A stretch of 64,000 nucleotides of DNA from IMGVR_UViG_3300047472_000309:1-64000, one strand, 5' to 3'. Shown: positions 3,132 to 17,514, counted from the stretch's first letter. Numbers and translations are program-made. The notes: generated from the letters alone by a model not told the origin.

Positions 3132-5042
3132 TTACCAGCGCGAGCTGAAGCCCGTGCGGCCCCAGCCAGCGCCTTGGTTCGACTGACCGCCGAAGCCTGC
3201 CGCGAACAGACCGGTTGCACCCGGCGCCATGAGCAGGCCGTTGGCGAACTGCGCCGTTGCACGCTCTTGACCCGCGACGTCGCCGAACGGGTATTGTGCA
3301 CGCAGGACGAGACCCGCATCCACGCAGCCCTTGGCCAGCGCTTCCATGAACGCACCGTCCAGCGTTGCACGACGTGCGAAACCCGTGAAGGTTGCATCGC
3401 CGACCAGACCCTGGATGATGTTCTTGCGACGCGCGAGACGCTGCGCGGGCGAGATTTGCAGATTGACGAACGTGTCGCTCCAGTCCTTGATGACCGTCGG
3501 GTCCTTCTCGCCGATCAGGTTCGCTACCGCGAGGTAGTCGATGTCGCGGATGTCGCGCTTGCGACCTTGCTGGTCGACGTACCAACCCAGGTGAATGCGG
3601 TTGTTGTTGTCGAACGCAACGCGGCCCGTGCCGTTCGTGTAGTGCTTCAGGAAGTTGCCGTTCGTCAGCGTCTGCGCTGCTTCGATGATGAACTCGTTGG
3701 CCTTCGGGCTGCCTTCAGCAGCAGCCGCGAACACCGAGTTCGACCAGGTCGACGGACCGCATTCCGGCACGTCGATCGAGAGCAGCAGGCCCGGACGCAC
3801 GAAAGCTTGCAGCAGCTTGTGCAGCGTGCCTTGTGCCGTGAACGCGTCCGACTTCGTGTCGATGCGCGCGCCGATGCCGTTCGCGTTGCCTTCCGGATTC
3901 GCTTCGATACCGATTGCACCGATGTCGTGCATGTCGATGCCTTGCGCGTAAGGACGCGGTGCGAAACCACGTGCCCAGGCGTTGCCGTCGCGCAGCGTGA
4001 GCGCCTGAACCAGCGCGAACAGCTGTGCCGGAACGGTCATCAGCTCGAGCGTTTCCAGGTGCGTCATCACGAAGTGCGTGATGTACAGCGGGTTGAACTG
4101 CTGTTGCTGCGCTTGACCCCACTGCGCGTACGGGTTCGCGGTCGGCGCGACCGGGTCCCACACGAGGTCGAGGAAGCCGCCGACTTGCGAGACCTTCGTC
4201 GCGCGTGCGTCTGCGTTGGCGCCCTGGCCGGTCGTGATTGCCGTGGCGATCAGGTCGATCATCACGTCGGTGCGGATCGGCTCGCCGACCGGGTCGACCA
4301 GTTGGTCGTGGTTGAACGCGACGCGCGCGGTCAGGTTCGAGTCGCGTGCTGCGCCAGCCAGGTTCAGGTCGCGGAAGTCCGTGCGCATGCGGTTCAGTTC
4401 GTGGTTCGCGGCAAACAGGGCGTTCGCGGCGAGCTGGTACACGAGCTGTTCGTCTGCGACGTCGAACGAACGCGGCACGACTTCGGCTTCAGCGTCGATC
4501 AGACGCGCGCCGTTGAAGGTACGGGCCACGGCATCGGCCACGACTTCGCGGAACTTGTCGTCCCACACGTCGCCGTCGACACGCTGGATTTCGACGTTCT
4601 GGCCGTTGATCTGGTCGTACTTCGGCGGGAACGGTTCGCCCGAGCCTGCGAGGATCAGCGTGTGGTACGCGACGCCCAGGTCCAGGTCGTTCTTGTCGAA
4701 CAGCGCCACGATGAGCGCCGAGCGCGCGATCGCCGGGTTGTTGTTCATGTCGAGCGGCAGCAGCTTGATCTCGAAAGCCGGGTTCGCCGACTTGTACGTT
4801 TCGATCAGTGCCTTCTCGAGCTTGACGAGCACTTCAGCGGCCGGGTTGCGACCCATCGGTGCGTTGCCCAGGCGGCCGAGCGAGCGGAAGCTGAAGCCCG
4901 CCGGTGCGGATTGTTGTTGCTGGTTCATGGTGCCTCGCGGTTGAGAGTTCTGGTTGTCCTTGGCCCGGCTGAAGCCTGCTGCCATTTGCGTTTCTGCCGG
5001 AGCTGCTGCTTGGCCTTCTTGGCCCGGTTGTTCGATTGCCAT
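3132..5042 (-). CDS. chmA: Chimallin, major phage nuclear shell protein (phiKZ gp54-like)
   Basis: 636 aa, the typical size. Directly upstream of nvRNAP beta'. Extreme codon bias suggests very high expression. Q/G-rich flexible N- and C-tails; early promoter upstream. Confidence 0.9.
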   Translation of the reverse strand: MAIEQPGQEGQAAAPAETQMAAGFSRAKDNQNSQPRGTMNQQQQSAPAGFSFRSLGRLGNAPMGRNPAAEVLVKLEKALIETYKSANPAFEIKLLPLDMNNNPAIARSALIVALFDKNDLDLGVAYHTLILAGSGEPFPPKYDQINGQNVEIQRVDGDVWDDKFREVVADAVARTFNGARLIDAEAEVVPRSFDVADEQLVYQLAANALFAANHELNRMRTDFRDLNLAGAARDSNLTARVAFNHDQLVDPVGEPIRTDVMIDLIATAITTGQGANADARATKVSQVGGFLDLVWDPVAPTANPYAQWGQAQQQQFNPLYITHFVMTHLETLELMTVPAQLFALVQALTLRDGNAWARGFAPRPYAQGIDMHDIGAIGIEANPEGNANGIGARIDTKSDAFTAQGTLHKLLQAFVRPGLLLSIDVPECGPSTWSNSVFAAAAEGSPKANEFIIEAAQTLTNGNFLKHYTNGTGRVAFDNNNRIHLGWYVDQQGRKRDIRDIDYLAVANLIGEKDPTVIKDWSDTFVNLQISPAQRLARRKNIIQGLVGDATFTGFARRATLDGAFMEALAKGCVDAGLVLRAQYPFGDVAGQERATAQFANGLLMAPGATGLFAAGFGGQSNQGAGWGRTGFSSRW

Positions 5043-6997: not shown

Positions 6998-7218
6998 GCT
7001 GCTTCTCGTTCTTGGTATCGTTCTAGTGTTGCTTCGGCTTCTTCGAGCGCCGCACGCACTTCCGCTAGGCGGTTGGCTGCTTCCTCGACCGTCCAAGCTT
7101 CGCCACCCCGTTGGGCACTGTGCGCTATCCGGCTAAACTGATGCTGGATAGCACGCGCACCCCGCTCTTGTTCTTGTCGCCATGACGGCGCCCATGGTTT
7201 ATTCTGACGCTTGGCCAT
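6994..7218 (-). CDS. Hypothetical coiled-coil protein
   Basis: 74-aa ORF whose stop overlaps the next start (ATGA). Confidence 0.7.
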   Translation of the reverse strand: MAKRQNKPWAPSWRQEQERGARAIQHQFSRIAHSAQRGGEAWTVEEAANRLAEVRAALEEAEATLERYQEREAA

Positions 7219-7224
7219 GCTAGT

Positions 7225-7473
7225 TCACCGGTGATTCCACCACTGACGACTACGTTGGTTCTTGGTTCGCTTGGCTTGTCGCTCACGTTGCGCTTGACGC
7301 TCTTCCGCAGGTGTGAGGGGCGCTGCCATGTAGCTCAGTTCTTCTTCCGAGTACGGGTTGGGGGTGGGCGGACAGATCTGATTGAACACCCGTTGCGCGG
7401 GACTGTGCGACTTCATAGGTGCGGCGTAAGGTGGCGAAGTGACGGGTTTCTTGTAATCGCGTGAATCAAACAT
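7225..7473 (-). CDS. Hypothetical basic protein ending RSRQWWNHR
   Basis: Start MFDSRDY at 7473 with AGGAG RBS; the longer 5' extension in the track overlaps the next gene. Confidence 0.65.
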   Translation of the reverse strand: [82 protein letters not shown]

Positions 7474-7481
7474 CTCGACTC

Positions 7482-7661
7482 CTAGAAGGCGTACCACATC
7501 AACCAAGCGACGGCGGAGATCAAGCAGCCGATTACCAAGAAGCCAGCCGCGGCAATGCTTTGGAACGGCACCCGCTCCGGCGTCGCCAGACCCAGGGCCG
7601 GTAGCCCCACACAAAACACCGTGATCCAGATCGGCAACCAGTAGGAATGAAAGGAGATCAT
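7482..7661 (-). CDS. Small two-TM membrane protein (59 aa, not in track)
   Basis: MISFHSYWLPIWITVFCVGLPALGLA...AAAGFLVIGCLISAVAWLMWYAF; ATGA overlap with the upstream gene; fills the operon gap. Confidence 0.7.
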   Translation of the reverse strand: MISFHSYWLPIWITVFCVGLPALGLATPERVPFQSIAAAGFLVIGCLISAVAWLMWYAF

Positions 7662-8014
7662 GTCGTGGTCAGAATGTTGGGCAAGGCGAGGAGGATGTTC
7701 TCGAGCGCCTTGGGCACACCTCGGTCACGGGCCGAACCGCGCGACATGACAAACGGAAAGTAGGCTTTGATCTTGTCGACCAATGCCGTATCGGCCACGT
7801 CGCACGTGTAGATGCTGGTATTGGCATCCGGCGTGCCTTGGAACATGTCGATCAAGAGCGCACAGGCGCGCGACATGTAGGGCTCGGCCGCGATGTCCTT
7901 CTCGTCGAAGACTTCCGGATGCTGACGGATAAAGCTGGTCCAACCACGGATAATCCCGACACTGGCGAGAAGGTTATTCGGCTCCACGGTTTCCCGTGTT
8001 TGATCGAAATTCAT
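7658..8014 (-). CDS. Hypothetical protein
   Basis: Start MNFDQ in an ATGA overlap with 8011-8265. Confidence 0.7.
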   Translation of the reverse strand: MNFDQTRETVEPNNLLASVGIIRGWTSFIRQHPEVFDEKDIAAEPYMSRACALLIDMFQGTPDANTSIYTCDVADTALVDKIKAYFPFVMSRGSARDRGVPKALENILLALPNILTTT

Positions 8015-8265: not shown

Positions 8266-8484
8266 TCCACGATTCCTTCAAATACCCAGCGCCGCAGGGC
8301 AGCTTGAGCAGCAATCTGGCGATCCAATGCACCCCGACGGTAGCCGCTCACGCGCTGCGAATTTCCGTTTGCATTGGTATTACGAATGCGCACGGGATTC
8401 TTGATCGTCGTGCGTTTAACTACGTTTACCCCGAACATCAGCTGGCCTCATCGTATGCTTATCTGACTAATATAGGACGTTTCT

Positions 8485-10196: not shown

Positions 10197-12326
10197 TTAG
10201 TGTGAGTCTGACACCAAACGTGTCAATTTGTCGTTGGACAGATAAATGCCCAACGTTTCGAGGATAATGTAAAACACGCGCGTAGCATCCGCAACGATCT
10301 TACGCACCCCGGCCACCTGGAGGATCTCAGTCGGAATCCCCTTAGTCTGGAGATTCTGTTCCGGCAATTGCACGGAGCCCACATAGCGCTTACCCATTCG
10401 CTTCATGTACGCTTCCATGCGCCCTGCCAGTTCACGATCCTCAAGCGATTCCAACCACTCACGGGTCTTGGTCGGTGTGTCCAGCTCGGTGGCAATCTTG
10501 ACACACGTGTACGGTACAGGGGGGGCGATACCATACTTGGGACCAAATACCTCGTTCCACATTACGTACTGCTGATACGGTGATTCTTCCGCCGACTTCG
10601 CGTACGAATCGGGCGTTTTGATCTGACCCATCCGGAAGAACTGATAGCCACCTTCGCCAATCGCCGTAAAGATCTGGCGCTCGATGTCAGCAATCGTTTT
10701 CAGGATGTCGTGAATCTTGATCTTCTCGCCCTTTAGCACCGAGTTCATGATAAAGAGCATCATCTTCTCGGCTTCCTTAATCACAAAGCGTGGCGCATTC
10801 GACGCCTTCAAGTGCACGCCCTTGATTTCCTTCTTGTACTCCTTGAAGAGGTTGCCTTCCTGGCAGCCAATCAAGGCGAAGTAGTGCTTGGCCACCTGGG
10901 TCGCGACAAACACGTCGAACTTGAATTCGTTCTTCATGGCGACTTTGTGGATGTACTTCTCCACAATCCCAAAGTTCGCACTCATGCGCGCCAACACGTG
11001 AATGATAGTCTGCGCTGCCAGGTACACCATCGAGGCCGCTACCGCATTACACTTCTCATCAAAACCGAGCCAGCCCTGATGCCAGAGCACCCAGTCTTGC
11101 ACGGTAAAGATAGTCGAGTCCGTATCCGACGTAATCGCCGAACGACGAATCGAGTCCGGGAAAAACGCGAGAGAAGCAGGTACGTTGGTCGTCACCCAGA
11201 AGGCCGCGATCAGGTCCCGATACTCTTCCCCCACGTCGCCGATGTTCTTGGCTGTCGAGGCGAGAATACCGCGCGCCTCACCGACGATTTCATGCATCTG
11301 CAAGCCCTTGGTGTAGCGCTCACAGATTTGGGCTGCCAGGTGAACGTGTTCTTCTTGCACCGTCTTCAAGATGCTGTCAGGCTCCGGATGCGGCACTTCC
11401 ACCATCATCGACAACTTGCTGATGAAGGTCCGCACCACCTCGTCATTAAAGCGCATCAGGTGGTACAAGTCCCCCGTGTAGACAAAGGCAGAGCGCTGCT
11501 CGGGTGAGAGCGTCTTCACCAGGTCATACACCTTCTTCATCTTGAACTTGTCGCGCACATAGAAGTTGGTCGAGTACATGATGCATTCCATCGTCTCATC
11601 GACCGACGGATGACGAATGCCAAACTTGCGCATCGCCGCAGCTTGCGCTGCATAGTCCGTGTGGTTGATAATCGAGATGATATTCTGCATGCAGATCTCG
11701 ATCGACCAGTAATGGCGATTGCCCGAGAGGAACTTCTCGTTATTCGCATTGCCAAAGCCCGAGGTCGAGCGACAGTTCGAGGTGAGCGTCGAGTGGGCGG
11801 TCTTGTTGTACAGCGGCGTCGAAGGACTGACGTGCGCACCCGAGATCGAGTTATTCGCCAGCTTCTTATTGGTCTGCTCATTGTCCTTGATCTGCATCAG
11901 GACGACGTCGCCTTCCATTTCCGCTTTGAACTTGGCCTTCTTCGCCACCCCCCGTGCCTTCACGTTGCCCTCGATGTAATCAACGAGCGGTGACTGCTTC
12001 ACATCGGGATGCAAATACGTGGTAAGCGTCGGGGCAATGAGTTCTTTGTTACGGATCGAATCATTCAGGTAGGCTTGTAGCGTACCTTCCATCTGGACCC
12101 GGTCACCGTTTTCTTGGCGCTCCAGGTAGACGATCTTCGGGTCCTTGAATTCGAACTGTCCGCCAGGACGCATCTCTGTTTTCACAAAGGTGGTGCAGTC
12201 CTCGATCGGTGCCCCCGTCATTTGATGCAAATAGGTCGCGCAGTCCTGGACATAATAGCCCAGTACATTTAGATCGCGCTTGTACTGGGAAGGCGCCAGT
12301 ACAAATGGGTTGTTCGCTTCTGACAC
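10197..12326 (-). CDS. Family B DNA polymerase, polymerase-domain half (phiKZ gp50-like)
   Basis: Motif B KKLANNSISG, motif C SDTDS, KHY and IKGV motifs; no N-terminal exonuclease domain, consistent with the split polymerase of phiKZ-like phages. Confidence 0.92.
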   Translation of the reverse strand: MSEANNPFVLAPSQYKRDLNVLGYYVQDCATYLHQMTGAPIEDCTTFVKTEMRPGGQFEFKDPKIVYLERQENGDRVQMEGTLQAYLNDSIRNKELIAPTLTTYLHPDVKQSPLVDYIEGNVKARGVAKKAKFKAEMEGDVVLMQIKDNEQTNKKLANNSISGAHVSPSTPLYNKTAHSTLTSNCRSTSGFGNANNEKFLSGNRHYWSIEICMQNIISIINHTDYAAQAAAMRKFGIRHPSVDETMECIMYSTNFYVRDKFKMKKVYDLVKTLSPEQRSAFVYTGDLYHLMRFNDEVVRTFISKLSMMVEVPHPEPDSILKTVQEEHVHLAAQICERYTKGLQMHEIVGEARGILASTAKNIGDVGEEYRDLIAAFWVTTNVPASLAFFPDSIRRSAITSDTDSTIFTVQDWVLWHQGWLGFDEKCNAVAASMVYLAAQTIIHVLARMSANFGIVEKYIHKVAMKNEFKFDVFVATQVAKHYFALIGCQEGNLFKEYKKEIKGVHLKASNAPRFVIKEAEKMMLFIMNSVLKGEKIKIHDILKTIADIERQIFTAIGEGGYQFFRMGQIKTPDSYAKSAEESPYQQYVMWNEVFGPKYGIAPPVPYTCVKIATELDTPTKTREWLESLEDRELAGRMEAYMKRMGKRYVGSVQLPEQNLQTKGIPTEILQVAGVRKIVADATRVFYIILETLGIYLSNDKLTRLVSDSH

Positions 12327-12389
12327 TTTGTTTTACTCCTTGTCGACCTACATGATCAAGGCGCCCAATAAAAACGAATCGACGGCATA

Positions 12390-12846
12390 AAAAGGAAAAA
12401 AGGGCGAGGAGCGGTTTCGGGCCGCCACCTCGCCTAAATACAGGTCGTTACAAGTACCGAAAAGGAAAACCAGTCACTGAACATGCCCGAGCGATTCGGA
12501 GCCACAGAGACTCTACTACCACTACCACTTCAACCAAAATCGAGGTAGACAGGGGCCAGCTTACTCTTAATCCACGCGATCGACCAACTTCCACAGGAGA
12601 CTCCTATATTCGCCAAAGAGCGCTTGCGGAGGCGCAGAGCAGCGATAGGAGTAGGATCGATGTACGAGGAAACGCCGGTGCCAGGGGAAACAAGGAGGAA
12701 ACCCCAGCAGCGTGAATAAGCCAGCCCCGCGTCTAGGCATACGGCGCGGTAGCCCGCGGGAGGGCTCGCGCGAGAGTCCTTACCGGCACCAGTCAGGAGG
12801 AGGCCTGATGTCGATGAGGGTACAGGCTTGCCGGGCCTTTCTCTTC
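12390..12846 (+). ncRNA. Candidate structured RNA with GGA-rich loops
   Basis: No ORF of 60 aa or more. At least six stems whose mismatches are G-U on the + strand; about 16 GGA versus 4 TCC; ends in hairpin plus TTTCTCTT. Confidence 0.55.
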
Positions 12847-12893
12847 AGAACATTACGGATGGGCGATATAAATTAACTAGGGTAAACCCTGGC

Positions 12894-13295
12894 TTATTTG
12901 ATCGCTACCGTAACGAAGTTGTAACCGTTGGCGGCCAAAATAGCCTGAACCTTCGGAATGTCCTGTGGGGTCACCTGGGCGATGGTCGCCGTGATGGTCT
13001 GCGCGGTGATGAGCGTGACCGACGAGTCGTCGATCCATGCCACGCCCAAAATCTGCGTGTTGCCGTTTTGCGTCTTGACCTTGATGTACAGGTACGCGGC
13101 TGGATCGTTCGGTGTGTTGGTTTGCGGACCGAAGAGCGGGTAGAACTGCACGTGCAAGGACGTGACGTCCTCGTCCTTCATCGCGTCTTCATACGACATC
13201 ACCGAGGTGACCTTGACGTTCTGCCAGTCGCTGCCCAGCAGAGGCGGATAGACGTTAAACGAGTACGTCTGCCCGATAGCAAAATTGTAAGCCAT
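12894..13295 (-). CDS. Conserved phiKZ-like protein (gp49-like by position)
   Basis: Start MAYNFAIG; beta-rich; adjacent to the DNA polymerase gene. Confidence 0.7.
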   Translation of the reverse strand: MAYNFAIGQTYSFNVYPPLLGSDWQNVKVTSVMSYEDAMKDEDVTSLHVQFYPLFGPQTNTPNDPAAYLYIKVKTQNGNTQILGVAWIDDSSVTLITAQTITATIAQVTPQDIPKVQAILAANGYNFVTVAIK

Positions 13296-13328
13296 GGTTT
13301 CCCGTGCCCAAATGAACAAAAAAAAAGA

Positions 13329-13730
13329 TCAGAAGGGCAGGTGATCCAAAATCACGTCGTCACCGAGAAACTGGTGGACGTAGTACGGGAAGCCGTAGCC
13401 GCTACCGGCTGCTCCTGTACGTAGCCCACGCAGCCCCTCGAGACGCGCGTACACACTCTGTGCCAGATTTTGAACCGCTGCCCGCAATCGCTGATACTCG
13501 CTAGACGCCGTGTTTTCATAAACCGGGTCTACTATACGATTGGTAATGGGCAGCGCCTCAAGTCGGGCGGGACCGTTCGCTGAATAGTCCAAAAACACTT
13601 CGAAGATCTGCGTGAGGATTTCGCGCTTATCGTTGAAGTGAATAGGCAAACCTTGCACTTCAAACAGAAACTGCGCCCAGAGATCCGCGGTCTCAAAGAT
13701 CATGAGTCTGCTGTAATGCTCGTTTGCCAT
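13329..13730 (-). CDS. Hypothetical protein, tandem paralogue 7
   Basis: Start MANEHY; C-terminal FPYYVHQFLGDDVIL. Confidence 0.7.
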   Translation of the reverse strand: MANEHYSRLMIFETADLWAQFLFEVQGLPIHFNDKREILTQIFEVFLDYSANGPARLEALPITNRIVDPVYENTASSEYQRLRAAVQNLAQSVYARLEGLRGLRTGAAGSGYGFPYYVHQFLGDDVILDHLPF

Positions 13731-16771: not shown

Positions 16772-16837
16772 GGCGGCTCCTTATACACAGTATCCAGCGG
16801 CTACGTTTGTTTTGACTATTTGTGTAACTGCGGCATA

Positions 16838-17246
16838 AAAAAATAATCAGTCCCTTTTGCACCCTCCTACTGGAAGGCATAAAAGGGACTCACCTCGTCC
16901 GATGCTCACCCAAACAGCGACCCGTAAAACGGACTGTGGGATTGTTGCGATCGGAACTGAGGTGGTCTGGACATCTCAAGATGCGAGCCAAGAGTTAGGC
17001 CCTATCGCTCATCCTTACCACGACCCATGGGTCTAGTAAACGATTGCCTCGGGTACTCCCTTGAAAACTGTCGCACTTATTGCCTCCTGCTCACCGGGGG
17101 TGGCAGGCCATTACTCACGGAATGTAAAAGACTGCCTAGCCCCTAAATGCACCCCCTGCGCCTGATGCGCGGTTCGGCTGGTATGGGACTAAGAGTCTGC
17201 GCATGGCCAAATCATCGGTCCGAATCAACGGGCCAAGCGCATCGCC
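16838..17246 (-). ncRNA. Candidate structured RNA or long 3' trailer downstream of phuZ
   Basis: No ORF of 60 aa or more. Consecutive long helices, then an AGTCCCTTTT/AAAAGGGACT hairpin and U-run on the - strand. Confidence 0.45.
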
Positions 17247-17471
17247 TCAATGGCTGAAGGTACTACGAGCACCCTTAGCTCGCGTTGCCTTCCCCAGCTG
17301 GGGACGTCGCGCATGATGTCTATTCACCCGAGCTTGCGCCAGCCGAGGTGAGGACCGATGAACTTTGCGATTGGCGGCCGCTTGGAGGGAAGGGAACCAT
17401 GAAAAATCATGGTAGAGCCACTTCATCTCCCGCAGCCACCATCGAGCCAGGTTTCTCACATGGCTAAACAT
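17247..17471 (-). CDS. Small basic hypothetical protein
   Basis: 74 aa, AAGGA upstream, directly after phuZ. Confidence 0.45.
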   Translation of the reverse strand: MFSHVRNLARWWLREMKWLYHDFSWFPSLQAAANRKVHRSSPRLAQARVNRHHARRPQLGKATRAKGARSTFSH

Positions 17472-17514
17472 CGGTTCTTATTGCTTTCCTTATCGTGTTT
17501 GCTGCGTTCTTGTT

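What the first reader, a model, noticed from the sequence alone, without database searches (positions are those of the whole stretch)
12390..12846. Candidate 450-nt GGA-loop RNA (CsrB/RsmZ-like sponge or Shine-Dalgarno decoy) divergent from the DNA polymerase gene
Seen stems: GGGCGAGG/CCTCGCCT (12402-12435); ACTCCTAT/ATAGGAGT (12600-12652) enclosing GCGCT-TGCGGA-GGCGC; GGGG-AAACAAGGAGGAAA-CCCC (12684-12705); AGCCC-GCGGGA-GGGCT (12751-12766); TCAGG-AGGAGG-CCTGA (12793-12808); and a final hairpin with U-rich tail (12824-12846). Mismatches are G-U on the + strand. A hand count gives about 16 GGA versus 4 TCC. One loop reproduces the phage's own RBS, GAAACAAGGA. Known: CsrB and RsmY/Z display GGA in loops to titrate CsrA/RsmA. 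Inference: a phage sponge RNA for an RBS-binding repressor. If made from the - strand instead, its CCUCCUUGUUU loop could pair with phage RBSs.
Basis: partly seen in the sequence, partly recalled or inferred. Interest (0 to 1): 0.8.

Follow-up and report, generated by a model that had tools for sequence, protein, structure and literature searches.

The report
Jumbo-phage structured RNA with anti-RBS loops
The 567-base gap next to the DNA polymerase gene of this nucleus-forming jumbo phage very likely encodes a large folded non-coding RNA, but it is read from the opposite strand to the one proposed, so its loops show the complement of ribosome-binding sites (CCUCC/UCCUU), not GGA.

Summary
The stems and the 15:4 GGA:TCC count are real. 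Both flanking genes lie on the minus strand: a phiKZ-gp49-like baseplate/"SH3DP" gene and the DNA polymerase C-subunit gene. The gap has no conserved ORF. It is conserved in Burkholderia phage FLC9 and about 10 metagenomic relatives.

Covariation supports a fold. In the 229-nt core, 22 of 62 pairs show compensatory changes and 97.9% of cells are paired. No shuffle of 500 reached this.

Wobble pairs place the RNA on the minus strand (G·U 63, A·C 2).

On the minus strand three conserved loops carry CCUCCUCC, UUUCCUCCUUGUUU and CUCCGCAA. The second is the exact complement of the phage's extended ribosome-binding site, AAACAAGGA(G/A).

No Rfam family matches. RNA-library contigs from four environments cover only the gap.

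The CsrB/RsmZ sponge reading is not supported. I see it as a new RNA family that may work like S. aureus RNAIII or phage P1 c4 RNA.

The parts
12894..13295 (-). Upstream gene. Pfam SH3DP (PF20287); homologue of phiKZ gp49, a baseplate ring protein.
   Evidence: Pfam E 1.5e-31. Profile hit to PDB 9xqs_M 'PHIKZ049', E 4.9e-25. The phiKZ virion atlas places gp49 as 12 dimers in the baseplate (PMC13250141).
12877..12892 (-). Small hairpin just after the upstream stop codon. Possible terminator of the upstream operon.
   Evidence: A hairpin is kept at this place in the subclades, with different sequences. Weak evidence.
12850..12876 (-). Promoter-like AT-rich motif UUAAUUUAUAUCGCCCAUCC. It resembles the phage's hairpin+TATGCCGTCGATCC module (10 of 14 positions) and the TATAT core of early promoters.
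   Evidence: Conserved as AGTTA(A/T)(A/T)TT-TAT(A)TCG in all clade members. No transcription start has been mapped.
12824..12859 (-). Invariant 36-nt block UCCGUAAUGUUCUGAAGAGAA(A/G)GGCCCGGCAAGCC(U/C) with two small hairpins (12839-12850 and 12824-12838). It is either the 5' part of the RNA or part of its promoter.
   Evidence: Identical in all 10 distinct clade sequences except one covarying pair, A-U to G-C. Unique in the window. RNA-library contigs of two runs stop at 12836.
12793..12808 (-). Hairpin UCAGG-CCUCCU-CCUGA. First conserved CU-rich (anti-Shine-Dalgarno-like) loop.
   Evidence: The other subclade keeps a hairpin (GCGG-UUCCUCCUC-CCGC) in a shifted register.
12544..12771 (-). Core structured domain (model R1). 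It holds hairpin 12744-12771; a roughly 20-bp long helix (12714-12735 with 12546-12566); the anti-RBS hairpin; hairpin 12600-12652 with inner stem-loop 12620-12635 (loop CUCCGCAA); and hairpin 12571-12599.
   Evidence: 97.9% of cells paired, 22 of 62 pairs with changes on both sides, 0 of 500 shuffles as high, slid controls 40-48% paired. G.U 63 against A.C 2. One copy in the window. Homologue in L013, E about 0.007-0.02.
12680..12708 (-). Anti-RBS hairpin GCUGGGG-UUUCCUCCUUGUUU-CCCCUGGC. The 14-nt loop is complementary to AAACAAGGAGGAAA.
   Evidence: Predicted 9-10-bp duplexes of -10.9 to -14.2 kcal/mol with the RBSs of pol, chimallin, an nvRNAP subunit and three small genes. L013 has UUGGG-UUUCCUUGUUUU-CCCAA at the same place.
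12455..12543 (-). Variable 3' region. Indels and little sequence conservation between subclades.
12438..12453 (-). Box A, UUGUAACGACCUGUA(U). An invariant island just before the terminator, complementary to the polymerase leader.
   Evidence: Duplex with the leader island -11.6 kcal/mol, P about 0.02 against shuffles. Extended duplex -15.8 to -18.2 kcal/mol in three subclades.
12390..12435 (-).
   Evidence: -21.9 kcal/mol. Compensatory changes in L010, L012 and FLC9. The T-run follows the hairpin only on the minus strand.
12378..12389 (-). TATGCCGTCGAT, a phiKZ-type TATG promoter for the polymerase gene. Inferred start at G 12386.
   Evidence: The hairpin+TATGCCG module recurs at about 12 of 16 TATGCCG sites in the window. 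TATGCCG is found in 12 of 21 non-redundant relatives' gaps against 0.6 expected. In phiKZ the G of TATG is the start site (PMC4666361).
12327..12386 (-). Inferred 60-nt polymerase 5' UTR, with an invariant island UGAUCAUGUAGGUCGACAAGGAGU (12335-12358) that includes the SD AAGGAG (12336-12341).
10197..12326 (-). Divergent family-B DNA polymerase, C-terminal subunit (phiKZ gp50 homologue), GTG start.
   Evidence: PF20286, E 8.6e-244. PHROG 2927. PMC13648687.

Best explanation
The gap encodes a structured non-coding RNA of about 450-480 nt on the minus strand, the same sense as both neighbouring genes.

Layout. The RNA is bounded upstream by a hairpin plus an AT-rich promoter-like motif, near 12850-12892. 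Downstream it ends at a strong intrinsic terminator, 12390-12435. A separate TATG promoter then drives the DNA polymerase gene.

Structure. The core is a long helix of about 20 bp that encloses a multi-helix junction. Three conserved hairpin loops expose CU-rich sequences that look like the 3' end of 16S rRNA. One of them, UUUCCUCCUUGUUU, is the exact complement of the phage's extended ribosome-binding site (RBS), AAACAAGGA(G/A). That site precedes the chimallin gene, a non-virion RNA polymerase subunit gene, the DNA polymerase gene and three small genes.

Proposed mechanism (inferred, not shown). The RNA base-pairs with these RBSs and masks them, tuning or shutting off translation. Its 3' seed, box A, sits just before the terminator and pairs with the conserved polymerase leader next to the SD. 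The RNA would act in trans, or in cis on read-through transcripts.

What is shown: absence of conserved coding, conservation, covariation, the strand, the terminator and promoter modules, and the complementarity. What is inferred: a discrete transcript, its exact ends and the regulatory effect.
For: - Both flanks are minus-strand genes, and no ORF is conserved across the clade.
- The gap is 68% identical to FLC9 over 92% of the query, with alternating invariant blocks and compensatory stems.
- RNAalifold on 6 sequences gives -114.7 kcal/mol (covariation term -13.5) on the minus strand and -86.5 (-3.5) on the plus strand.
- On 10 sequences the values are -225 and -202, against -152 +/- 7 for column shuffles.
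- In the core, 97.9% of cells are paired and 22 of 62 pairs are compensatory, with 0 of 500 shuffles as high. G.U 63 against A.C 2.
- The terminator folds at -21.9 kcal/mol and has a 12-nt U-tract.
- The hairpin+TATGCCG module recurs across the genome and upstream of the polymerase gene in distant relatives. TATG is the phiKZ late promoter.
- The loop is complementary to six RBSs, -10.9 to -14.2 kcal/mol.
- The box A: leader duplex has P about 0.02. Extended duplexes in three subclades give P 0.015-0.046.
- A hairpin with a large UUCCUU-bearing loop sits in most of the 21 non-redundant SH3DP-pol gaps. TTTCCTT is found in 10 of 21 against 1.4 expected.
- RNA-library contigs from rhizosphere, root, mine-drainage and freshwater samples lie only on 12573-12836, with depth up to 27.
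Against: - No strand-specific or end-mapped RNA data exist. The Logan contigs have no direction, and the runs were chosen by matches to this stretch.
- Complementarity to the phage's own polymerase RBS is not above shuffles: P 0.25 for the window.
- It is also not above cross-phage pairings: permutation P 0.25. So there is no co-evolution signal beyond generic SD/anti-SD pairing.
- Box A and its partner are invariant, so no covariation can support them, and L013 and more distant loci have no counterpart.
- Contigs of two runs stop at 12836, so the invariant 5' block may be promoter rather than RNA.
- The hairpin at 12824-12838 pairs better on the plus strand.
- The structure used for the wobble count was predicted on the minus strand, which favours G.U there. 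However, the helices shared by both strands' predictions still give 28 G.U against 5 A.C once the terminator is left out.
- Only about 6 independent lineages carry alignable sequence.
Confidence: 0.4

Rival explanations
1. A plus-strand RNA of about 450 nt shows GGA or RBS-like loops and sponges a CsrA/RsmA-like RBS-binding repressor, or ribosomes, as CsrB and RsmY/Z do.
For: GGA 15 against TCC 4 on the plus strand. The loops are the same hairpin loops. Hairpin 12824-12838 followed by UUCUCUUC scores as terminator-like on the plus strand and gains two G.U pairs there. RNA-library contigs end at 12836, close to that hairpin.
Against: On the plus strand the core helices would carry 63 A.C mismatches against 2 G.U, dropping pairing from 97.9% to 86.1%. 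The plus-strand consensus fold is weaker. No early or TATG promoter lies upstream on the plus strand, and the TATATT at 12605 is not conserved. No Rfam CsrB/RsmY/RsmZ match at E up to 10. The GGA excess is marginal given composition, and distant relatives show no GGA/TCC bias.
Confidence: 0.05
2. No trans-acting function. The region is a long structured 3' UTR of the upstream structural operon. It would act as a transcription or RNA-decay insulator between a late baseplate gene and the polymerase gene, and its CU-rich loops would be incidental or would only keep ribosomes off.
For: It lies between genes of different function. It ends in one of the phage's ordinary terminator+promoter modules. 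FLC9 and L012 have no convincing hairpin between the upstream stop codon and the conserved block. The tests for target specificity failed.
Against: An insulator does not need 230 nt of covarying multi-helix structure or invariant loop sequences. PhiPA3, RP12 and RSF1 manage with gaps of about 100-185 nt, and L025 with 9 nt. The loop motif is conserved while the stems change.
Confidence: 0.2
3. A decoy or scaffold RNA. Loops that mimic the 16S rRNA 3' end (CCUCCUU) titrate or recruit a protein instead of pairing with mRNA. Candidates are protein S1, Hfq, a hibernation factor or a phage protein. Alternatively the loops draw off a host RNase toxin that cuts UCCUU-type rRNA sites.
For: The CCUCCUU and UUCCUU loops are conserved across divergent phages while the stems vary. 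RNA-library data suggest abundance. From my own knowledge, not tested here: some MazF toxins cut at UCCUU/UUCCU, and phage RNAs such as pseudo-ToxI can counter RNase toxins.
Against: No partner has been identified. The neighbouring SH3-fold protein is a baseplate component in phiKZ, which removes the one protein lead I had. Nothing here separates protein binding from RNA pairing.
Confidence: 0.12
4. A replication element: an origin or a primer transcript, like ColE1 RNA II, placed beside the polymerase gene. Chimalliviruses have no identified primase, and their polymerase complex carries an RNase H domain.
For: Position beside the polymerase gene. The lack of a known primase and the RNase H-clamp subunit are reported in PMC13648687. 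The size is close to that of RNA II (my own knowledge).
Against: No GC-skew turning point near 12.5 kb. No G-rich tract that would favour an R-loop, since G and C are about equal. No iterons or repeats were noted. Related phages with short gaps lack the element.
Confidence: 0.05
5. The gap holds one or more small protein genes, and the SD-like motifs are their ribosome-binding sites.
For: ORFs of 31-57 aa exist on both strands. On the plus strand, AAGGAGG lies 13 nt before a GTG that opens a 54-aa ORF at 12712-12876.
Against: No ORF keeps its frame, start or sequence across the subclades. Indels are not multiples of three, and the predicted products are Arg-rich and of low complexity.
Confidence: 0.03

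Closest known systems
CsrB / RsmY / RsmZ sponge RNAs
   Same: A multi-hairpin non-coding RNA of a few hundred nt with a short motif repeated in the loops.
   Different: On the strand that covariation supports, the loops read CCUCC/UCCUU, not (A)GGA. No match to the Rfam models. No CsrA-type partner is known. The motif bias is absent in distant relatives.
Staphylococcus aureus RNAIII, and the RsaE/RoxS class of C-rich-loop sRNAs
   Same: From my own knowledge, RNAIII is about 514 nt with many hairpins, and several C-rich loops pair with the Shine-Dalgarno regions of several mRNAs to block translation. Here the RNA is about 475 nt with three conserved CU-rich loops complementary to SD/RBS sequences of several phage genes.
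   Different: No sequence or structure homology, and no Rfam hit. No embedded peptide gene. It is encoded by a phage and made by phage RNA polymerases. Targets have not been demonstrated.
Phage P1/P7 c4 antisense RNA
   Same: A phage RNA encoded just upstream of its target, on the same strand, whose exposed loops pair with the RBS region of the downstream mRNA (my own knowledge).
   Different: c4 is about 77 nt and is cut out of the same transcript as its target. Here the RNA is about six times larger, has its own terminator, and the target gene has its own promoter.
Large phage-associated structured RNAs of unknown function (GOLLD, ROOL)
   Same: Large RNAs with many helices and covariation support, carried by phage genomes, with no known function.
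   Different: No match to those Rfam models. This one is smaller. Its distribution is narrow: the FLC9-like chimalliviruses plus L013.
sRNAs reported in phiKZ and 201phi2-1 (PMC11512511)
   Same: Non-coding RNAs of nucleus-forming jumbo phages, bounded by a start site and a nearby terminator. Some are conserved by position between genera.
   Different: Those were filtered to under 250 bp, and the conserved one lies upstream of a tail gene (gp182/gp277). None was reported between gp49 and gp50, where phiKZ-type phages have only about 100-185 nt.
T4 RegA / RegB
   Same: Phage systems that act on the SD/RBS of a set of early mRNAs to turn off their translation (my own knowledge).
   Different: Those are proteins. 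Here the proposed effector is an RNA.

Membership tests
CsrB/RsmY/RsmZ (CsrA-sequestering RNAs) | Many (A)GGA motifs in hairpin loops on the transcribed strand | tested here: not met
   GGA is enriched only on the plus strand (15 against 4), and marginally (P about 0.11). Covariation and wobble pairs put the RNA on the minus strand, where the loops read CCUCC/UCCUU.
CsrB/RsmY/RsmZ (CsrA-sequestering RNAs) | Match to the family covariance models | tested here: not met
   Rfam 15 gave nothing at gathering score in the window. At E up to 10 in 12200-13000 there were only three chance-level hits to unrelated families.
CsrB/RsmY/RsmZ (CsrA-sequestering RNAs) | A CsrA/RsmA-type protein partner in the phage or host | not tested
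   Only 10 window proteins were scanned against Pfam and PHROGs. None was CsrA-like. The host genome is not available.
S. aureus RNAIII (RF00503) | Match to the family model; embedded hld ORF | tested here: not met
   No Rfam match. No conserved ORF.
S. aureus RNAIII (works-like comparison only) | C-rich hairpin loops complementary to the SD regions of several mRNAs | tested here: met
   Loops CCUCCU, UUUCCUCCUUGUUU and CUCCGCAA. Predicted 9-10-bp duplexes with six RBSs. Actual pairing and repression have not been tested.
P1/P7 c4 antisense RNA (Rfam C4) | Match to the family model; roughly 77-nt RNA processed from the target's own transcript | tested here: not met
   No Rfam match. The element is about 475 nt, and a terminator and a promoter separate it from the target gene.
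Group I / group II intron in a polymerase gene | Interrupts a continuous reading frame; matches intron models | tested here: not met
   The polymerase protein matches PF20286 from profile position 4 and has its own RBS and start. In L025 the two ORFs are only 9 nt apart and still separate. No Rfam intron hit.
Intrinsic terminator + phiKZ-type TATG promoter module | GC-rich hairpin, U-tract, then TATG with the start at G; recurs upstream of genes | tested here: met
   Sequence at 12378-12435. Recurs at about 12 sites in the window and in 12 of 21 relatives' gaps. The phiKZ rule comes from PMC4666361. Termination and initiation were not measured.

The most novel reading that the evidence does not exclude
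Nucleus-forming jumbo phages of the FLC9 group, and perhaps a wider set that keeps a 430-850-nt gap with a UUCCUU-loop hairpin at this locus, make an abundant large RNA that mimics the anti-Shine-Dalgarno end of 16S rRNA. It would mask the extended RBS AAACAAGGA of key phage mRNAs (chimallin, nvRNAP subunit, DNA polymerase) as an RNA-based timing switch for translation. Alternatively it would decoy host factors or toxins aimed at that rRNA sequence. Together with the second conserved non-coding region at 16772-17514, this would mean that these phages carry a set of large structured RNAs not yet described.
Probability: 0.15. Interest if true: 0.85.

Novelty: new variant of a known kind. Interest (0 to 1): 0.6.

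Why it matters
Large structured RNAs with covariation support are rare in phages, and I found none reported for this locus in chimalliviruses. These phages separate transcription, inside a protein 'nucleus', from translation in the cytoplasm. How they time translation is largely unknown.

An abundant RNA whose conserved loops are the exact complement of the RBS of the shell protein, RNA polymerase and DNA polymerase genes would offer a direct handle on that question. A cultured relative exists to test it in: FLC9 on Burkholderia glumae.

The work also corrects two things. The Pfam label of the upstream gene ('associated with DNA polymerases') hides the fact that its phiKZ homologue is a baseplate protein.

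Tried and rejected
- Rfam at gathering score and at E up to 10: nothing. tRNA/tmRNA scan: none.
- Intron hypothesis: rejected, because the polymerase ORF is complete and the two ORFs are separate in L025.
- Small-ORF hypothesis: rejected.
- Exact-pattern scans of IMG/VR, JGI metagenomes and GTDB genomes for the loop hairpin. They returned only the same phage clade plus 20-nt chance matches.
- nhmmer, and covariance model R1 on about 30 distant loci with filters on and off. Only L013 is alignable; the other hits are terminator-like hairpins.
- RNAduplex of the whole RNA against the leader: uninformative, because of giant internal loops.
- Contiguous-helix test against shuffles, and a cross-locus permutation test for co-evolution with the phage's own polymerase RBS: both negative.
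- Search for a box A counterpart in distant loci: none.
- Origin of replication: no skew signal.
- The idea that the neighbouring SH3-fold protein is a MazF-like binder of the UCCUU loops. I dropped it after finding that its phiKZ homologue is a baseplate ring protein.
- The AlphaFold model of that protein (pLDDT 84.5) was not taken further.
- The plus-strand TATATT at 12605 as an early promoter: not conserved.
- Literature searches found no report of an RNA at this locus.

Full report
**Setting**

The window comes from a nucleus-forming, phiKZ-like jumbo phage.
- It encodes a chimallin (3132-5042, minus strand; PF25677, E 9e-55) and a piece of the non-virion RNA polymerase.
- Its nearest cultured relative is Burkholderia phage FLC9, with 86% polymerase identity.
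- The finding lies in a 567-nt gap (12327-12893) between two minus-strand genes. The element is therefore not divergent from the polymerase gene.
- Downstream, 10197-12326 is the divergent family-B DNA polymerase (PF20286, E 9e-244). It corresponds to the phiKZ gp50 C-terminal subunit.
- Upstream, 12894-13295 belongs to Pfam family SH3DP.
- The phiKZ member of that family, gp49, matches a solved chain at E 5e-25. A 2026 cryo-EM atlas shows it as a ring of twelve dimers in the baseplate. Another paper calls it a polymerase interactor.

**Checking the observation**

The listed stems are present, and GGA:TCC is 15:4.

The plus strand of the gap is A-rich and T-poor (A 126, T 69). Shuffles therefore already give 11.0 +/- 2.8 GGA, P about 0.11.

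Folding the single sequence is only mildly better than shuffles on either strand (z -1.95 and -1.78). Rfam has no match at gathering score, or at E up to 10.

**Conservation**

- The gap is 68% identical to the equivalent, unannotated gap of FLC9.
- Ten distinct sequences from 14 loci of the FLC9-like clade align along its whole length. Invariant blocks alternate with stems that change in a compensatory way.
- No ORF on either strand keeps its frame or sequence across the subclades.
- A gap of 430-850 nt is kept at this position in most metagenomic relatives, down to about 45-59% polymerase identity.
- PhiPA3, RP12 and RSF1 have only about 100-185 nt, and one relative has 9 nt.

**Structure**

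- RNAalifold on six sequences gives -114.7 kcal/mol on the minus strand (covariation term -13.5; 27 of 112 pairs compensatory). The plus strand gives -86.5 (covariation term -3.5).
- With ten sequences the values are -225 and -202, against -152 +/- 7 for column-shuffled alignments.
- I built a covariance model of the core (window 12544-12771, minus strand) and aligned 11 matches to it.
- On that alignment 97.9% of cells are standard pairs and 22 of 62 pairs have changes on both sides. None of 500 shuffles reached either value.
- Sliding the partners by 1-3 columns drops pairing to 40-48%.

**Strand**

- In the core helices there are 63 G.U cells against 2 A.C. Read on the plus strand, pairing would fall to 86.1%.
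- About 25 of the 62 pairs show a wobble variant in some sequence.
- Helices predicted independently on both strands give 30 G.U against 15 A.C. Leaving the terminator out, this is 28 against 5.
- The structure was derived on the minus strand, which biases the first count. The shared-helix count does not have that bias.
- One exception: the small hairpin 12824-12838 gains two G.U pairs only on the plus strand.

**Transcription signals**

A GC-rich hairpin directly followed by (T)TATGCCG recurs at about 12 of the 16 TATGCCG sites in the window, mostly in front of genes. TATGCCG also lies 60-100 nt before the polymerase gene in 12 of 21 non-redundant relatives, against 0.6 expected.

In phiKZ, TATG is the late promoter of the non-virion polymerase, and its G is the start site. 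So the stem is a terminator for minus-strand transcription through the gap, and the polymerase gene has its own promoter with a leader of about 60 nt.

At the other end, the upstream stop codon is followed by a small hairpin and the motif UUAAUUUAUAUCGCCCAUCC. This resembles both that module (10 of 14 positions) and the TATAT of the early promoter core TATATTAC. Clear early promoters of the 201phi2-1/phiKZ type stand before the chimallin gene and elsewhere.

No early or TATG-type promoter motif was seen on the plus strand at the polymerase end of the gap, and the one early-like TATATT at 12605 (+) is not conserved.

**Loops**

On the minus strand three loops are conserved in sequence:
- CCUCCUCC (12793-12808);
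- UUUCCUCCUUGUUU (12688-12701);
- CUCCGCAA (12624-12631).

A fourth loop, UCCCGC, is not conserved.

The second loop is the exact complement of an extended RBS, AAACAAGGA(A/G). That RBS precedes the chimallin gene, the nvRNAP subunit gene, three small genes and, as GACAAGGAG, the polymerase gene. Predicted duplexes are 9-10 bp, -10.9 to -14.2 kcal/mol.

L013 (59% polymerase identity) is the only distant locus the model finds (E about 0.007-0.02). It keeps the long helix with compensatory changes, a UUGGG-UUUCCUUGUUUU-CCCAA hairpin in the same place, a CCGC-UUUCCUCCUUUGA-GCGG hairpin, and the terminator+UAUGCCG module.

In most of the other gaps, local folding places a UUCCUU-type motif in the large loop of a hairpin. 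TTTCCTT occurs in 10 of 21 gaps against 1.4 expected.

**Link to the polymerase leader**

An invariant island just before the terminator, box A (UUGUAACGACCUGUA), is complementary to an invariant 24-nt island in the polymerase leader that ends in the SD.
- The duplex is -11.6 kcal/mol, P about 0.02 against shuffles.
- Extended versions reach -15.8 to -18.2 kcal/mol in three subclades.
- A seed followed by a terminator hairpin and a U-tail is the usual layout of trans-acting bacterial sRNAs (my own knowledge).

**Negative tests**

- The best contiguous helix between the RNA and the phage's own polymerase RBS is not above shuffles (P 0.25 for the window).
- Across 19 phages, an RNA pairs no better with its own RBS than with another phage's (permutation P 0.25).
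- L013 and more distant loci have no box A counterpart.

The complementarity is therefore real, but it has not been shown to co-evolve.

**Expression**

Eight RNA libraries hold 31-mers of the gap, and all the words lie inside it.

I laid four runs (rhizosphere, root, mine drainage, freshwater) on 11800-13400.
- Contigs at 90-96% identity cover only 12573-12836, with depth up to 27.
- On the flanking genes there are only three short, low-identity pieces (35-47 nt, about 85-89% alike).

Caveats:
- The contigs have no direction.
- The runs were picked by this sequence.
- Coding flanks of relatives may fall under the 85% threshold.

Two runs stop at exactly 12836, although 12837-12859 is invariant in every DNA relative. 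One contig then continues into 68 nt found nowhere in the window. This may mark an RNA end, in which case the invariant block would be promoter. It is not resolved.

**Interpretation**

I am fairly confident (about 0.85) that this is a structured non-coding RNA on the minus strand, and that it is a new family.

How it works is inferred. The best fit is a base-pairing regulator whose anti-SD/anti-RBS loops and 3' seed mask the RBSs of phage mRNAs, the adjacent polymerase mRNA among them. It would work like S. aureus RNAIII or P1 c4 RNA without being a member of either family (confidence about 0.4).

No GC-skew signal supports an origin.

**Elsewhere in the window**

A second ORF-poor region at 16772-17514 (minus strand) is 73% identical to an unannotated stretch of FLC9. 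It folds with 27 compensatory pairs in a two-sequence alignment and ends in the same hairpin+TATGCCG module.

Noticed in passing
window 16772-17514 (minus strand); L068 285-1054: A second ORF-poor region of 743 nt, 73% identical over 98% of its length to an unannotated stretch of FLC9 (record 7024-7773). The two-sequence consensus fold has 197 pairs, 27 of them with compensatory changes. It ends in a hairpin followed by UUUUUUUAUGCCG. A possible 74-aa ORF (17247-17471) at its 5' end was not assessed. This may be a second large non-coding RNA.
   Followed up: partly
window 9638, 12389, 16837, 23869, 24202, 30106, 38874, 44380, 62450 (minus strand); 19996, 25926, 27688 (plus strand): A recurrent module: a GC-rich hairpin directly followed by (T/C)T-TATGCCG(T)(T/C)(G/A)AT, mostly in front of genes. 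I read it as terminator plus phiKZ-type TATG promoter. The same TATGCCG lies before the polymerase gene in 12 of 21 divergent relatives.
   Followed up: partly
window 5135, 19087, 44341 (minus strand); variants at 8474, 23831, 24164: An early-promoter-like motif, GATTCAAAGATTTGTT.GACCTATATTAC. It matches the published phiKZ core TATATTAC and the 201phi2-1 consensus. One copy stands before the chimallin gene.
   Followed up: partly
window 2981, 5058, 15073, 23424, 43684, 12343 (all minus strand): An extended ribosome-binding site, (A)AACAAGGA(A/G), shared by the genes for an nvRNAP subunit, chimallin, three small unknown proteins and, as GACAAGGAG, the DNA polymerase. Most other genes have a plain SD.
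   Followed up: partly
window 12894-13295 (minus strand): Annotation conflict. The Pfam family is named 'SH3 fold domain associated with phage DNA polymerases', but its phiKZ member gp49 is resolved as a baseplate ring protein (PMC13250141). An antisense-oligomer screen found the gene important for plaque formation and called it a polymerase interactor (PMC12571901).
   Followed up: partly
L010 about 1755-1765 against L011 about 1182-1192 (terminator loop): Two otherwise near-identical relatives differ by an inversion of the terminator loop: GGUUUCGGGCC against GGCCCGAAACC. This looks like a flip of a palindromic hairpin tip.
   Followed up: no
window 12836: RNA-library contigs of two unrelated runs (root, freshwater) both end their match at exactly 12836, inside hairpin 12824-12838. 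One continues into 68 nt that match nothing in the window.
   Followed up: partly
window 12845-12853 (minus strand): The invariant 5' block contains a two-codon mini-ORF, AUG-UUC-UGA, with no SD before it. It is kept in every clade member. This may be coincidence.
   Followed up: no
window about 12480-12510 (minus strand): The window's subclade carries about 20 extra nt in the variable 3' region compared with L009, next to a short GGUAGU repeat (12515-12528).
   Followed up: no
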